A stretch of 63,598 nt of DNA, the filler included, from Octopus bimaculoides (Eukaryota): assembly GCF_001194135.2 (NCBI RefSeq). It is 7 parts of 7 records of this genome, joined end to end, with 100 filler letters (N's around TTAATTAATTAA, not from the genome) between each part and the next. Parts side by side here need not be neighbours in the genome. Positions count along the whole stretch, not along the records: positions 49,742 to 55,043 come from NC_068992.1; 6 more parts are not named here. One strand, written 5' to 3'. Position 1 is the first letter of the stretch. Every line of letters starts with the position of its first letter. Both the position numbers and the translations under genes were made by a program. The notes below the pieces were generated by a model that did no database searches, was not told the origin of the DNA, and saw only the letters and a program-made list of their open reading frames with translations. Below, piece after piece: positions 49,742 through 55,143 of the stretch.

Positions 49742-49806
<65 letters not shown>

Positions 49807-49920
49807 GTGAAAAGTATTAAAGGTTTCTGTACAGGTGTTATATTAAGAGAATTAAGGTAATATTTTATGACAAAATAAAGAATTAAAGAGGTAAAAACAG
49901 GTGTAATATTTAAATCTATC

Positions 49921-50140
49921 AAGGCAGCAAACAGGCAGAAATGTTAGCATGCCAGGCAAAATGCTTAGCAGTATTTCGTCTGTCTTTATGTTCTGAGTTC
50001 AAATTCCACTGAGGTCTACCTTGCCTTTCATCCTTTCGGGGCCGATAAATTAAGTACCAGTTGTGTACTAGGGATGATCTAATCAACTGGCCCCCTTCCC
50101 CCAAAATTTCAGGTCTTCTGTCTAGATTAGAAAAGAATAT
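49921..50140 (+). mobile_element. SINE family B copy with heavy CpG decay
   Basis: Collinear with 38401 and 27411. Six of the first seven CpGs are TpG or CpA. Confidence 0.9.
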
Positions 50141-52823
50141 TTAAATCTATCCTGTGTTTTTTAACTTACATAACTGGTTTTATCTGCTGTAGTTGTGGAT
50201 TTATAAAGTGAAAATAGTTATAGTGTTTGCAATATATAGGGTTAGAGTATTGTAGCTGGACACACAATTAGAGTAACAAGATAAAACACAAAATATGAAA
50301 GGATATGGCCTTTAGACAGTAACTTAAAGAAGGGTGCATTAGAAATTTGAGTGACAAGATAGGATTTTTAAATGAAAGACTGCCCTAGAGAGATTGATGG
50401 GTAGATACATGGAGAGAATCAGCAAGACAGGTTGATAGATTAATAATTATTCTTTCATGTAAGACAAGGAGTGGTTAGTTGAACTTTGGTTTCAGGCTGG
50501 TCAAAAATATTTCTAAGTGCCTGTTTTGGTAATCCATCTAGATTACTAGCAACAACAACCAAATAGCCCTTATGGTAAACAAAAAGACACAAACATACAT
50601 ACACACATTCATATTTACTCATACACACACACATACATATTTTTTCATACACACAAACACACACATATTAACTTGCATCCATGCACACAAGAGTTAATGG
50701 TAGATTGTATACATCCCAAAACTATGTGAATGTGTGCTTGTATGTCCCCATAGGAGTGTATCCTAAGTTGCCTGAAACTGTTTGTCAATCATTCCAGCAA
50801 GGCTGGAATTTCATAAAGAATTTTCTTCCTTTATTTATTCATAGATGTTACATGGTAGAATCTGAGCATTTGTAAAATGGAAACATCTTTAAATTGGGTG
50901 GTTCCATTTCAGTATAAGTTGCTATGTGTTCCTGTTTTTTTTCTTTTTTTTTTCATTATTTGTTGCTTATGCATCATTAAGCGTCTGCAAAGTGATAATC
51001 CCTTCTGTCTGATGCAGTTTCTACAGTATGTTATGGCATAAATTGAGTTTTAGAAGTTGCAAGAGAAATTTTCTTTTATTTTGAAGACATGTCTGTGCTT
51101 AAATTTGAATTCCAAGCTGTCATTTAAGTACAGACATGTACCACAATTCAGGCTACCACATTTAGAAACCATGGGGTTGGGCAATTTGGTGGAGGAGCTT
51201 TGCTGAAGTTAGAATATTCATGTAAGTCTTTGGTTACCTTTTGTTTTCAATGACAAATTGATTTTCTAGTAATTTTTCCATTTTTTGATTTTCAAGCAGA
51301 ATAGGTTTGTTGCTTCATATATAGTTAAATATTTCATAATTTCTTGGTTTAAAAGTAGAGACCTAAAGTAAAACATTTTGTGGGGAGCTTTACTTTTTAC
51401 TTCTCTAAGAAAATGGATATCTAAACATTTTTACTCTTTCTATTCCTTTCACAATAAGATTGAGTGGAAATGCTCTTTCAATTAGTATTTCTTTCAGCTC
51501 TTCCTGTCTGTGTAAATGGCTCATGCTGCTTGACCACATGCCACATGGTCACAGCAGATGAGAAGGTATCTTACGTAAATAGAAACTGATTGGGATTCTG
51601 TTTAGCTGGTCACCCAAGAGGACCCAGAAATATGCTGATAGATGGTAAATAAAGCAACACACTTCAACAGCACTTGCCCTCACATTCAATCTGGCCTTCC
51701 AGACTTTGATCATCTTTTTTTAACATTTGACACAATCGTGCAAATCCTTTCTGCTAAGTTGAAGGGAGTGTTTGTTTTTTTATATGTTTAGAATGAAAGG
51801 ATGTAAAAAGAGGATATTGTTTGGAATTCATGGTTTTTGTAAAATTTTACCATTTTACAAATGTTCAAACTCTACCACAGAACAATGCAAAATGAATAAA
51901 ACAGACAATTTATTACAAAATATAAACACTTCTTGAATGGATGACAAACAATTTCTTGGACTTGGATGTGTGATTTCAGACACACTTCCATAGACTCACA
52001 CACCCATATTCATATAGCATTTAGATATATATACAGTATACCATTAACCTGTGTGTGTGTGTGTATATGCAACTTAATATGTATGTGTGTATGTATAACT
52101 ATGTATGTGTCTGTATTTATTATAAGGACTATTTAGTTTGTTTTTTTTCCGTTTTTTTTAATTTATTTATTTTTTGCTCAGTAATCTTGATGAAATGTCA
52201 AATTAGGCACTTGAATATTTTTGACCAGCCTTAAATCAAAGTTCAACTAACCGATCCTTTTTTTTTTTTTTTTTGTGAAAGAATAATAATTTATCTATCT
52301 ACCTATCTAGCTGATTCCATCCATGAATCTGCCTATCAATCTCTCTAGGCCAGTCTTTTGTTTAAAGTTTCTATTTTTCCTATCTCCACACTGCCTGTCT
52401 TACTGTTTAAAAGCTACATCCTTTCATTGTTTGTCTTATAACCTGATACACTAGTTTTGTGTCCAGTTACAAAACCTCCAAACCTATATATTGCAACCTC
52501 TATAACTATTTTTATTTGATGGATGAATAGATTTAAATGATAAATCCAAATCTTGACTGCCTCCTTTTATCAGAACAAATGCTATGTTATTAAATACCAG
52601 TTTAAGCTTGTTTCTTTCAAAAATACATAAATATATATATCAATATATATACAGATATAGATATATATTGGAGCCTAATGAGCCATGTATGAGGCTAAGC
52701 ACATTACAGATGTGAAACCATTCATCACTCTATGACTGGCCATATAATTAACTTCCTGTAAATATATGTGTGTCTGTGTGCACGTGGGCACACATGCATG
52801 TACAGTGATGTTATTTATATACA

Positions 52824-53006
52824 GTGCACGTAAAAGCACCCACTACACTCTCTGAGTGGTTGGCGTTAGGAAGGGCATCCAGCTGTAGAAACTCTGCTAA
52901 ATCAGATTGGAGCCTGGTGTAGTCATCTGGTTTCACCAGTCCTCAGTCAAATCGTCCAACCCATGCTTGCATGGAAAGCGGATGTTAAACGATGATGATG
53001 ATGATG
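52824..53006 (+). mobile_element. RTE-related retroposon 3' end with (GAT)n tail
   Basis: ggcgttaggaagggcatccagctgtagaa...ccaacccatgcttgcatggaaagcggatgttaaac(gat)n, with a terminal ccatgc/gcatgg stem. The clade assignment is from recalled RTE tails. Confidence 0.65.
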
Positions 53007-53893
53007 AGTGCCATAAACGTTAATAAATGTGAGGAGAAAAGGAAGTTGGCATACTTGACTCCCCTCAAGGCAAAATGCTTTATACCAAAATAATTTTTGT
53101 AAATTAAACAATTTAAAAAAAAAGGAAAGAGAGAAACAAGAAATAGAGGATGATTTACATTTATTTTATTTTATTTATTTATTTATTTATTTAGTGGTGA
53201 ATGCTTTATGATCTTTCATACTACCAAGTTTAGTGTGAGCAAGAGAAGAAATTTATTCTCTGACCAGACACCTGGACCAAAGTCCTTGCAAAAGAAAGCA
53301 CTTTTGTTTTAAAAGTACCCAAGGACCATTTGGTGACATTAACGTGAGAGGAGGATGAAGTCTGTCATAGAAATGCTCCCTCTGATGGATTCCTACTCTG
53401 TGTCTCTCTACCAATTATGATGTTTTAACTGAGATCACTTTCACATTTATGTTACTATATTTATGTTACCTTTGTCTAATTATATTGAAATTAATGAAGA
53501 ATTCAGTAAAAGTATGTAGTTATTTTCAAGCTTATGTTTAAAACTCAAATTAACATGAAATTTAGATGCCAGGTTTTAATTTTAAGTACTTTAAGACAAG
53601 TAGTTACTATCATATAATCAGGTGCAATCTCAGGTGGTTTGGTATTAAGAAGGTTTCAACCAAGTAATAGATGAAGTCCACCACCCAAGAACAGGAACAA
53701 AAATGGACTCTACAAGCAGCTTCTACAAATCTCCCCATATGAAGTTCCACTCAACAGTCTTTAGTCAACATGAGACTATTGTGCAAGACAGTAATCCAAG
53801 GTACCATACAACAGAAACTGTCCTGAAAACAAACTTTTTAATCAAACACAGCCATGATTGCACAAATAAATATAAAAAACAAACAGGACTTAC

Positions 53894-53975
53894 TTGTAAA
53901 ATGGAGTAATATGAAGACTAACATACTTGAAAATGATAGCAGTAACATGGTGGTAGACGGAATGAAGTGAGTAAT
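53894..53975 (-). CDS. Candidate host exon, product unknown
   Basis: Minus-strand donor CAA|GTAAGT at 53893 with a T-rich intron downstream, and acceptor TTGTTAAG|. Two frames are open: CCACCATG-MLLLSFSSMLVFILLHFT or DYSLHSVYHHVTAIIFKYVSLHITPFY. Confidence 0.3.
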
Positions 53976-54164
53976 CTTAACAAATAGTAGTTTTCCTTTT
54001 ATTTCTTTTAAGATCTTTTGTAAACAAAGTTGATTAGAATTTCTATATCAAATGTTCTTAAATATGAGCATTATTAATTTCTTTACTTTCATCTGTGAAC
54101 TGTATTTACAAACTGTAAAGGAGAAAACAGAATAAATTATAGTTTTTTGTCAGTTGATATTTCA

Positions 54165-54390
54165 ATCCTATAATCCTTTCTAATATAGACACATATCCTG
54201 AAATTTTGGTGGAAGGGACTACTTGATTACATCGACCCCTGTGCACTATTGGTAGTTATTGTATTAACCCCAAAAGAATGAAAGGTACAGTTGACCTCGG
54301 CAGAATTTGAACTTGGACTGTAAGGGACTGGAAAAAATGCTTGGTGGTATTTTGTCCAACATGCTAACAATTCTGCCTGCTCACTGCCCT
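54165..54390 (-). mobile_element. SINE family B copy with CpG decay
   Basis: Reverse-complement family B. CpG positions are mostly TpG or CpA. Confidence 0.8.
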
Positions 54391-54493
54391 TCTAAACCTT
54401 ATATTTTATTCTTGGCACTTTAAATTATTCCATGTTCATGTGTGTGTATAATGTATATATATATATATATATATGTATATATGTTTGTATGTA

Positions 54494-54534
<41 letters not shown>

Positions 54535-54602
54535 TGAACCCTGGCGGCCAAGCAGGAAAGCAAAACGAAAAAGGGATTTAACAAGAGTAATCTCCCTCGA
54601 CC

Positions 54603-54635
54603 TTCTAGAAAGTTCTCAAACATTCTAGAAGCTTC
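54603..54635. promoter_or_regulatory. Heat-shock element (HSF site), 7 in-phase nGAAn/nTTCn units
   Basis: TTC-ta-GAA-ag-TTC-tc-aAA-ca-TTC-ta-GAA-gc-TTC: six perfect units and one single-mismatch unit at exact 5-bp phase. Confidence 0.8.
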
Positions 54636-54712
54636 CGGTTGACGTGGAAGTCAGGAACTTTCGGTTCATCCCTTATATGAAGGAACAATTTCTAAATTCG
54701 TGCCATTCATTG
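54632..54712 (+). promoter_or_regulatory. ETS/CRE/TATA-like/Inr core promoter candidate
   Basis: CTTCCGGT 54632; TGACGT 54640; GGAAGT 54646; GAActTTC 54655; TATATGAA 54674; Inr-like CCATTC with A54705 at +31 from the TATA-like motif. Confidence 0.5.
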
Positions 54713-55001
54713 CCGTTGATTCTTTGACATGCATTGAATCACGCCACTTGCTCACACACTCGCATGCACGTTCGTTTACCTTCTCGCTTTGAGACATGTG
54801 ATTGTAAAAGAATATGTTCATGTGATGCTACAAGCTTTCCTTCAATTAACCGTATATGTTAACACATTACCTCCAGTAATAATATATGTTATGACTTATT
54901 ACAAACATCTTGCAAATTCTTATTTCTTGTCATTTACGTACAAGATGGTGATCCCCACTTTCTCTCATGTTTATTAAATTATAGGATGTCACTTAACCAA
55001 C

Positions 55002-55043
<42 letters not shown>

Positions 55044-55143
55044 NNNNNNNNNNNNNNNNNNNNNNNNNNNNNNNNNNNNNNNNNNNNTTAATTAATTAAN
55101 NNNNNNNNNNNNNNNNNNNNNNNNNNNNNNNNNNNNNNNNNNN
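55044..55143. other. Artificial scaffold-join spacer
   Basis: 44N-TTAATTAATTAA-44N. Confidence 0.95.

What the first reader, a model, noticed from the sequence alone, without database searches (positions are those of the whole stretch)
54603..54712. Seven-unit heat-shock element with ETS/CRE and TATA/Inr: an unannotated stress-inducible promoter
Seen: TTCtaGAAagTTCtcAAAcaTTCtaGAAgcTTC in perfect 5-bp phase, a further GAActTTC, ETS and CRE half-sites, TATATGAA and an Inr-like site 31 bp downstream, in a CpG-retaining island. Known: three or more contiguous inverted nGAAn units bind HSF trimers, and long arrays mark strongly heat-inducible genes. Inference: a chaperone or other stress gene starts here. 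It could run rightward, with its body lost in the join at 55044, and/or leftward as a bidirectional promoter.
Basis: partly seen in the sequence, partly recalled or inferred. Interest (0 to 1): 0.7.

Follow-up and report, generated by a model that had tools for sequence, protein, structure and literature searches.

The report
Heat-shock-type promoter on an octopus contig
A short octopus DNA fragment carries a textbook-looking heat-shock switch (a binding array for heat shock factor, then TATA box and start site) in an unmethylated-looking island, but the gene it would control lies beyond the fragment's edge, so this is a well-formed ordinary promoter, not a new kind of element.

Summary
At 54603-54635 there are seven 5-bp-phased nTTCn/nGAAn units, six perfect and one AAA (20 of 21 core bases). 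The best of 200 dinucleotide shuffles reached 17, and about 0.26 such arrays are expected by chance in a 2.7-Gb genome. CpG observed/expected is 1.0 in 54536-54800 and 0.16 in the rest of the piece. SINE-derived ORFs hit only Octopus bimaculoides proteins, so the DNA is octopod.

The best reading is an HSF-responsive RNA polymerase II promoter firing rightward. The gene cannot be named. The 338 bp to the right are non-coding: 12 ATGs, only weak splice donors, and one ATTAAA. The whole 5.3-kb piece has no recognisable coding exon, and no octopus genomic context could be fetched.

Copy number could not be tested, so a transposon-borne (LTR- or Helitron-like) heat-shock array stays open. Direction is also unsettled, because the CpG-poor 4.8 kb to the left looks like a methylated gene body. 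This is a known kind of element and of low interest.

The parts
54603..54635 (.). Seven-unit heat shock element array: six perfect nTTCn/nGAAn units plus one AAA unit, i.e. two perfect three-unit HSF trimer sites joined in phase.
   Evidence: 20 of 21 core bases match; the shuffle maximum is 17. Both perfect TTC-GAA junctions have the pyrimidine-purine dinucleotide 'ta' described in PMC8379338.
54655..54662 (.). Proximal two-unit (head-to-head) partial HSE, GAActTTC. It is not in register with the main array.
54632..54639 (-). ETS-type site: ACCGGAAG on the minus strand, overlapping the last HSE unit.
   Evidence: Motif match only.
54640..54647 (+). TGACGTGG: CRE half-site (TGACG), also identical to the UPRE/ATF6-XBP1 core.
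   Evidence: Motif match only; the UPRE identity is from my own knowledge.
54646..54651 (+). Second ETS core, GGAAGT.
   Evidence: Motif match only.
54674..54681 (+). TATA-like box TATATGAA (7 of 8 to TATAWAWR).
54703..54709 (+). Initiator-like CCATTCA. The A at 54705 is the putative +1, 31 bp after the first T of the TATA.
   Evidence: This is the only TATA+Inr pair on the + strand of the piece that passes both Inr definitions.
54536..54800 (.). CpG-retaining island: 13 CpG, o/e 1.0, GC 44.5%. Scattered CpGs continue to 54937.
   Evidence: The rest of the piece has o/e 0.16; Poisson P 3e-7.
54705..55002 (+). Putative transcribed leader, non-coding. It has 12 ATGs, weak donors at 54798 (CAT|GTGATT) and 54948 (ATG|GTGATC), and ATTAAA at 54973. 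It ends in an (AT)n run at the edge of the piece.
   Evidence: Its translations found no homologue.
49742..54535 (.). Strongly CpG-depleted flank (o/e about 0.16) made of SINEs, an inverted repeat and microsatellites. No recognisable exon. Looks like historically methylated gene body or intron.
   Evidence: Methylation pattern of O. bimaculoides from PMC9476566.

Best explanation
The segment 54536-54800 is a heat shock factor (HSF)-responsive RNA polymerase II promoter in an octopus genome.

Proposed mechanism: on proteotoxic stress, HSF trimers bind cooperatively to the two in-phase three-unit sites of the array at 54603-54635, and probably to the two-unit site at 54655. They then activate a TATA/Inr core promoter 40-100 bp downstream, so that transcription starts near 54705 and runs rightward. 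The ETS and CRE/UPRE-like sites between the array and the TATA would give basal or other stress inputs and help keep the region unmethylated.

The first roughly 300 nt of the transcript are non-coding. They are either a short 5'-UTR exon followed by an intron, or a non-coding RNA. The body of the gene lies beyond the (AT)n run that ends the piece.

Shown here: the motifs, their phasing and spacing, their improbability by chance, the CpG island, and the absence of coding sequence. Inferred: HSF binding, heat induction, the start site, the direction, and the nature of the gene.
For: - Array of 20/21 core bases in seven phased units; shuffle maximum 17; about 0.26 expected per 2.7-Gb genome.
- It meets the published HSE definition: at least three alternating inverted nGAAn repeats, with one DNA-binding domain per repeat and one trimer per three repeats (PMC8379338).
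- TATATGAA at 54674 and the Inr A at 54705 are 31 bp apart. This is the only strict TATA+Inr pair on the + strand of the piece.
- CpG o/e is 1.0 in 54536-54800 against 0.16 elsewhere. In O. bimaculoides, methylation is concentrated in gene bodies and scant at promoters (PMC9476566), so a CpG island inside CpG-poor DNA fits a protected promoter.
- The island spans about -160 to +230 around the proposed rightward start site.
- The segment is single-copy within the piece.
- Octopod origin is confirmed by SINE hits only to O. bimaculoides.
Against: - No expression, HSF-binding or conservation data could be obtained.
- No gene was found: zero protein homologues for any ORF segment of 22 aa or more in the unique parts of the piece, and only noise with HSP70/90/60/10, sHSP, DnaJ and ubiquitin probes.
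- Downstream of the proposed start there are 12 ATGs and only weak donors scoring 4.6 and 5.4, a class that occurs about once per 150-200 nt in the piece. No convincing first exon can be drawn.
- Relaxed TATA+Inr pairs are common in this AT-rich DNA.
- Copy number in the genome is unknown.
- In 112 metagenome loci carrying a similar seven-unit pattern, none had a heat shock protein gene nearby. Such an array alone therefore does not prove a chaperone promoter. That sample mixes bacterial and eukaryotic contigs and many 10-bp tandem arrays, so it is a poor proxy.
Confidence: 0.55

Rival explanations
1. The heat-shock array belongs to a transposable element promoter, for example the U3-R-U5 of an LTR retrotransposon or a Helitron-like element. 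It would then be one of many copies, not the promoter of a host stress gene. The contig would break here because the element is repeated.
For: - TE-borne HSE arrays are documented: 61% of C. elegans HSEs lie in Helitrons (PMC6927752).
- In my metagenome scan one family of near-identical HSE arrays (L022/55/56/59/68/83/104) lies about 1.1 kb from a 1610-aa Helitron_like_N + PIF1 ORF in L068.
- The layout 54530-54942 can be read as an LTR. It starts with TGT and ends with ACA. Enhancer and TATA would be U3, and the start site would open R. A TGG-initiated primer-binding-site-like TGGTGATCCCCAC follows 3 nt after the ACA.
- CpG o/e near 1 over 54545-54937 also fits a young insertion.
- The piece is a 5.3-kb fragment ending 60 nt later.
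Against: - The 5' TGT is just part of a (TG)n microsatellite.
- The terminal inverted repeat is poor and no target-site duplication is visible.
- The primer-binding-site resemblance fades after 13 nt, and no octopus tRNA was available for comparison.
- No gag/pol or other TE protein signal exists anywhere in the piece.
- The segment is not repeated within the piece.
- The contig ends in an (AT)n run, which by itself explains an assembly break.
- By my recollection, LTR elements are a minor part of octopus repeats.
Confidence: 0.15
2. The promoter is real and HSF-responsive, but its main product runs leftward on the minus strand, or it is bidirectional. It would serve a broadly expressed, gene-body-methylated gene, for example a constitutive and inducible chaperone such as an HSC70-, HSP90- or HSP60/HSP10-type locus, whose first intron covers the 4.8 kb to the left.
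For: - The 4.8 kb to the left has CpG o/e 0.16.
- In O. bimaculoides methylation is concentrated in the bodies of about 14,000 broadly expressed genes and is low in intergenic DNA, TEs and promoters. One class of 8,972 genes is methylated across the body but unmethylated at the TSS (PMC9476566). CpG-poor DNA abutting a CpG island is what the 5' end of such a gene looks like.
- An HSE array is symmetric and can serve both directions.
- ETS sites are typical of housekeeping promoters.
Against: - There is no TATA or strict Inr on the minus strand downstream of the array.
- Minus-strand donors left of the array are very weak, at most 2.4.
- The island lies mostly to the right of the array.
- No exon was recognised in the 4.8 kb.
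- The CpG-poor flank could equally be the body or 3' flank of a neighbouring gene.
Confidence: 0.15
3. The array is an HSF-bound enhancer or insulator-like site inside a gene, without promoter activity of its own. Alternatively it is a non-functional, microsatellite-like expansion of a TTCTAGAA-type repeat.
For: - Many of the 112 metagenome hits are plain TTCTAGAANN tandem arrays with no heat-shock gene nearby.
- The array here sits 70 bp from (TA)n(TG)n microsatellites.
- No transcript structure can be drawn.
Against: - The spacers between cores differ (ta, ag, tc, ca, ta, gc), so this is not a simple tandem repeat.
- Retention of CpGs over about 265-400 bp implies long-term protection from methylation, which points to bound factors.
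- The TATA/Inr pair is at canonical spacing.
Confidence: 0.1

Closest known systems
Canonical metazoan heat-shock gene promoters (hsp70 / hsp83-hsp90 type)
   Same: Multiple contiguous inverted nGAAn units lie within about 100 bp upstream of a TATA box, with the start site about 30 bp after the TATA. Long arrays allow cooperative binding of two or more HSF trimers (definition in PMC8379338).
   Different: No chaperone coding sequence follows within the 338 bp available. The leader has 12 ATGs and no strong donor, unlike the short, ATG-free leaders of classical inducible hsp70 genes (my own knowledge). Gene identity and induction are unknown.
HSE-containing housekeeping or stress promoters with a non-coding first exon (e.g. 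human polyubiquitin UBC, PMC4552642; HSPA8 and HSP90 from my own knowledge)
   Same: HSEs are combined with constitutive-type sites (ETS, CRE) in an unmethylated CpG-retaining region. A short non-coding first exon followed by an intron is possible.
   Different: The best candidate donors are weak. Nothing links this sequence to any of these genes.
Transposon-borne HSE clusters (Caenorhabditis Helitrons, PMC6927752)
   Same: These are extended, overlapping HSE arrays that recruit HSF and can drive nearby transcription. An HSE-array family next to a Helitron ORF was seen in metagenome locus L068.
   Different: There is one array here, not a dense cluster of tens per kb. No Helitron or LTR protein or clear termini are present in the piece, and copy number is untested.

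Membership tests
Heat shock element (HSF binding site) | At least three contiguous, alternating inverted repeats of nGAAn in 5-bp register | tested here: met
   Seven phased units, six perfect; two perfect three-unit blocks. Definition from PMC8379338.
Heat shock element (HSF binding site) | Conserved G of each GAA; pyrimidine-purine dinucleotide between TTC and the following GAA | tested here: met
   G (or C on the other strand) is present in 6 of 7 units. Both perfect TTC-GAA junctions are 'ta'; the junction to the degenerate AAA unit is 'tc'.
Heat shock element (HSF binding site) | Occupied by HSF trimers on stress | not testable with these tools
   Needs ChIP, CUT&RUN or EMSA with octopus HSF1.
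Heat-shock gene promoter | HSEs lie upstream of a core promoter (TATA about -30, Inr at +1) | tested here: met
   TATATGAA at 54674; A of CCATTCA at 54705; array at -102 to -70. Motif-level evidence only; relaxed pairs are common in this DNA.
Heat-shock gene promoter | A chaperone, co-chaperone or other stress gene lies downstream | tested here: inconclusive
   No coding exon was found in 338 bp to the right or 4.8 kb to the left. The piece ends in (AT)n, and no octopus genomic context could be retrieved.
Heat-shock gene promoter | Transcript induced by heat | not testable with these tools
   Needs RNA-seq or CAGE from heat-shocked tissue.
Unmethylated (CpG-retaining) promoter island | Local CpG o/e near 1 within CpG-depleted surroundings | tested here: met
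   o/e 1.0 (13 CpG in 265 bp) against 0.16 elsewhere; P 3e-7. GC is only 44.5%, so it would fail vertebrate CpG-island GC criteria.
TE-borne HSE (LTR or Helitron) | Multi-copy in the genome, with defined element termini and target-site duplication | not testable with these tools
   No octopus genome was searchable. Within the piece the segment is single-copy. The metagenome scan found no sequence homologous beyond the HSE itself.
TE-borne HSE (LTR or Helitron) | LTR hallmarks: TG..CA ends, a primer-binding site complementary to a tRNA 3' end, adjacent gag/pol | tested here: inconclusive
   TGT at 54530 and ACA at 54940-54942, with TGGTGATCCCCAC 3 nt later. But the TGT lies in a (TG)n run, no TSD is visible, no TE protein is present, and only 60 nt remain before the edge of the piece.

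The most novel reading that the evidence does not exclude
The island is not the promoter of a conventional chaperone gene. It would be either (a) the promoter of a short heat-inducible non-coding RNA of about 290 nt, running from the start near 54705 to the ATTAAA at 54973, or (b) a transposon-derived LTR-like unit that has spread ready-made HSF-responsive promoters through the octopus genome. Case (b) would be a cephalopod counterpart of the Helitron-driven rewiring of the heat shock response in Caenorhabditis.
Probability: 0.15. Interest if true: 0.5.

Novelty: new member of a known kind. Interest (0 to 1): 0.22.

Why it matters
If confirmed, this gives a compact (about 180 bp), strongly predicted heat-inducible promoter from an octopus. 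It could be used as an inducible driver for cephalopod transgenesis and as a marker locus for thermal-stress studies. It would not change the understanding of the heat shock response, because the architecture is the textbook one. The more interesting possibility is that such arrays are carried by mobile elements in cephalopods, and only a genome-wide copy count can address that.

Tried and rejected
- Extending the piece to the right. Exact look-ups of the two ORFs overlapping 54666-54977 found nothing on record. A 3502-aa composite of every stop-to-stop segment of 22 aa or more from the unique parts of the piece, in six frames, gave zero hits at E<=10.
- Reaching octopus genomic DNA through SINE-derived ORFs. 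The hits were O. bimaculoides UniRef proteins, but they have no contig on record. That closed the route to octopus HSP loci as well, so the third protein search was not spent.
- Pfam scan of whole translated frames.
- Rfam. Nothing reached a gathering score. The best match, SCARNA7 at 54413-54551 (29.9 bits against 65), lies on the (TA)n(TG)n microsatellite and is spurious. No tRNA was found.
- Metagenome scan for a degenerate seven-unit pattern. It returned 112 loci, none homologous to this promoter beyond the HSE. The 75 nearest ORFs and direct tblastn found no heat-shock protein gene nearby. Many contigs are bacterial or carry TTCTAGAANN tandem arrays, so this was a poor calibration set. 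Its main use was to show a Helitron-associated array family.
- Local tblastn of remembered HSP70, HSP90, HSP60, HSP10, alpha-crystallin, J-domain and ubiquitin sequences against the piece gave only noise.
- Literature. No paper describes an octopus HSE or promoter, and no paper text contains the array sequence.
- An apparent in-phase tenth GAA unit at 54647 was rejected on re-indexing, because it is one base out of register.
- A coding start at ACAAGATGG (ATG 54945, donor ATG|GTGATC) was considered. It would need a second, unsupported start site downstream of nine earlier ATGs.

Full report
**What was checked.** The piece is window 49742-55043: 5302 bp, 33% GC, beginning and ending in (AT)n runs. 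I read the finding's region directly and re-derived every coordinate by script.

The sequence at 54603-54635 is TTCtaGAAagTTCtcAAAcaTTCtaGAAgcTTC.
- In 5-bp register from 54602 it reads CTTCT AGAAA GTTCT CAAAC ATTCT AGAAG CTTCC. That is seven alternating units, six perfect and one AAA.
- A phased scan of the piece scores this site 20 of 21 core bases. The next unrelated site scores 14. Two hundred dinucleotide-preserving shuffles give a mean best of 13.9 and a maximum of 17.
- From base composition, 5e-7 such arrays are expected in the piece and about 0.26 in a 2.7-Gb genome. It is not a chance match.
- The spacers differ between units, so it is not a simple tandem repeat.
- The published definition of an HSE is at least three alternating inverted nGAAn repeats, one HSF DNA-binding domain per repeat and one trimer per three repeats, usually with a pyrimidine-purine step between TTC and the following GAA (PMC8379338). 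This array has two perfect three-unit blocks in phase, and both perfect TTC-GAA junctions are 'ta'.

- GAActTTC at 54655-54662: two units, out of register with the main array.
- CTTCCGGT at 54632-54639, which is ACCGGAAG on the minus strand.
- TGACGTGG at 54640-54647: a CRE half-site and, from my own knowledge, also the UPRE core.
- GGAAGT at 54646-54651.
- TATATGAA at 54674-54681.
- CCATTCA at 54703-54709, with its A at 54705, 31 bp after the first T of the TATA.

I tested how much the TATA/Inr pairing is worth. Relaxed TATA+Inr pairs occur about once per 700 bp per strand outside microsatellites. Pairs that satisfy both Inr definitions occur only three times in 10.6 kb of both strands, and this is the only one on the + strand. 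The pairing is supportive but weak.

**CpG content is the strongest independent evidence.**
- 54536-54800 holds 13 CpG (o/e 1.0, GC 44.5%). The remaining 5 kb holds 21 CpG (o/e 0.16).
- Poisson P is 3e-7 for the island at background depletion.
- Island CpGs run from 54545 to 54785, with two more at 54851 and 54937.
[quoted passage not shown] Methylation is concentrated in the bodies of about 14,000 broadly expressed genes and is scant at promoters, transposons and intergenic DNA. One class of 8,972 genes is methylated across the body but not at the TSS (PMC9476566).
- A CpG-retaining island abutting strongly depleted DNA therefore looks like a protected promoter next to historically methylated gene body.

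**Organism.** ORFs translated from the SINE-like repeats hit only Octopus bimaculoides UniRef entries, at up to 100% identity. The best example is the minus-strand ORF at 52814-52942, LQSDLAEFLQLDALPNANHSESVVGAFTC. The same peptide recurs several times inside single gene models. The DNA is octopod, and these are exonised or mis-annotated SINE copies, not this locus.

**What gene? It cannot be determined.**
- The longest stop-to-stop frame in the piece is 86 aa.
- A composite of all segments of 22 aa or more from the unique regions, in six frames, found nothing at E<=10 in a database that does contain O. bimaculoides proteins.
- Probes for HSP70, HSP90, HSP60, HSP10, the alpha-crystallin domain, the J domain and ubiquitin gave only noise.
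- Downstream of the proposed start there are 12 ATGs between 54729 and 54986, and only weak donors. CAT|GTGATT at 54798 scores 4.6 and ATG|GTGATC at 54948 scores 5.4. Scores of 4 or more occur 68 times in 10.6 kb. There is a single ATTAAA at 54973.
- The transcript therefore begins with non-coding sequence. It is either a short 5'-UTR exon whose donor I cannot pick with confidence, or a non-coding RNA.
- Attempts to extend the piece failed. Exact ORF look-ups found nothing, and the octopus proteins have no contig on record.

**Direction.**
- Rightward is favoured by the TATA/Inr pair and by the island lying about -160 to +230 around 54705.
- Leftward, or bidirectional, is suggested by the gene-body-like CpG depletion of the whole 4.8 kb to the left.
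- However, the minus strand has no TATA or strict Inr and only very poor donors. The depleted flank could also belong to a neighbouring gene.

**Is it a repeat?**
- Within the piece the segment is single-copy.
- Genome-wide copy number could not be tested.
- A scan of metagenome contigs with a degenerate seven-unit pattern found 112 loci, none homologous to this promoter beyond the HSE.
- None of these loci had a heat-shock protein gene nearby, judged by Pfam on the 75 nearest ORFs or by tblastn.
- Many were TTCTAGAANN tandem arrays or bacterial contigs, so the sample does not calibrate animal promoters.
- It did reveal a family of near-identical arrays, one of which lies about 1.1 kb from a 1610-aa Helitron_like_N/PIF1 ORF in L068.
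- Together with the finding that 61% of C. elegans HSEs lie in Helitrons (PMC6927752), this keeps a TE-borne origin alive.
- 54530-54942 can be read as an LTR: TGT...ACA, enhancer and TATA as U3, then a TGG-initiated primer-binding-site-like TGGTGATCCCCAC 3 nt after the end. But the TGT is part of a (TG)n run, there is no target-site duplication, no gag/pol is present, and only 60 nt remain before the edge. I give this 0.15.

**Verdict.** This is very probably a functional HSF-responsive regulatory unit with the textbook architecture of a heat-shock promoter, most likely firing rightward. The claim that a chaperone gene starts here, the direction, the 'unannotated' status and the single-copy status all remain untested. 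It is a new instance of a well-known kind of element. Interest is low unless the copy-number test shows a mobile, HSE-carrying element.

Noticed in passing
window 50203-50889 and 51841-52520: A large inverted repeat with arms of about 690-720 bp, 69% identical, separated by about 950 bp. CA/TG-rich microsatellite-like tracts sit at the inner ends of both arms. It could be a foldback-type element or two inverted copies of one repeat family. No protein homologue was found for its arms or its centre.
   Followed up: partly
window 49923-50140 (+) and 54170-54388 (-): Two copies of the same SINE-like repeat in inverted orientation, 72.5% identical over about 220 bp. The right-hand copy ends about 150 bp upstream of the CpG island, separated from it by (TA)n(TG)n microsatellites.
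   Followed up: partly
window 52810-53010: A second SINE-like repeat ending in (GAT)n. Its minus-strand translation, LQSDLAEFLQLDALPNANHSESVVGAFTC, occurs at up to 100% identity, often several times per protein, inside unrelated O. bimaculoides UniRef gene models (for example A0A0L8FWQ2, annotated as an RWD-domain protein). This suggests SINE copies were annotated as coding exons in that gene set.
   Followed up: partly
window 49742-54535: The whole left 4.8 kb has CpG o/e of about 0.16. If the roughly 80.7 million CpGs quoted for O. bimaculoides are taken against my rough expectation from genome size and GC content, the genome-wide o/e would be about 0.5-1, so this is far below average. Given gene-body-restricted methylation in octopus, the piece probably lies inside or next to a broadly expressed, methylated gene.
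   Followed up: partly
window 51128-51224 (+) and 51497-51565 (+): Two exon-like open segments with good splice signals. One is ...FRNHGVGQFGGGALLKLEYS followed by the consensus donor CAT|GTAAGT at 51222. The other is tttctttcag|CTCTTCC...GAGAAG|gtatct. Neither has any protein homologue in the database. They lie in the centre of the large inverted repeat.
   Followed up: partly
window 54946-54958: TGGTGATCCCCAC lies 3 nt after an ACA. It resembles a retroviral or LTR primer-binding site (closest to tRNA-Trp as I recall it). Read on the same strand, it also resembles a tRNA T-arm/B-box (GGTTCGATCCCCAC) with 2 nt missing. It overlaps a Kozak-like ACAAGATGG whose ATG is followed directly by GT.
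   Followed up: no
L068:661-5487 (-), with related loci L022, L055, L056, L059, L083, L104: Metagenome contigs of about 30% GC carry near-identical flanks around a seven-unit HSE-like array and further HSE-like copies nearby. In L068 the array lies about 1.1 kb from a 1610-aa ORF with Helitron_like_N and PIF1 helicase domains. This is apparently an HSE-carrying Helitron in an unidentified eukaryote.
   Followed up: partly
window 49742-49810 and 55003-55043: The piece begins and ends in long (AT)n runs. It is probably a short contig whose assembly broke at microsatellites, which alone explains why the gene body is missing.
   Followed up: no
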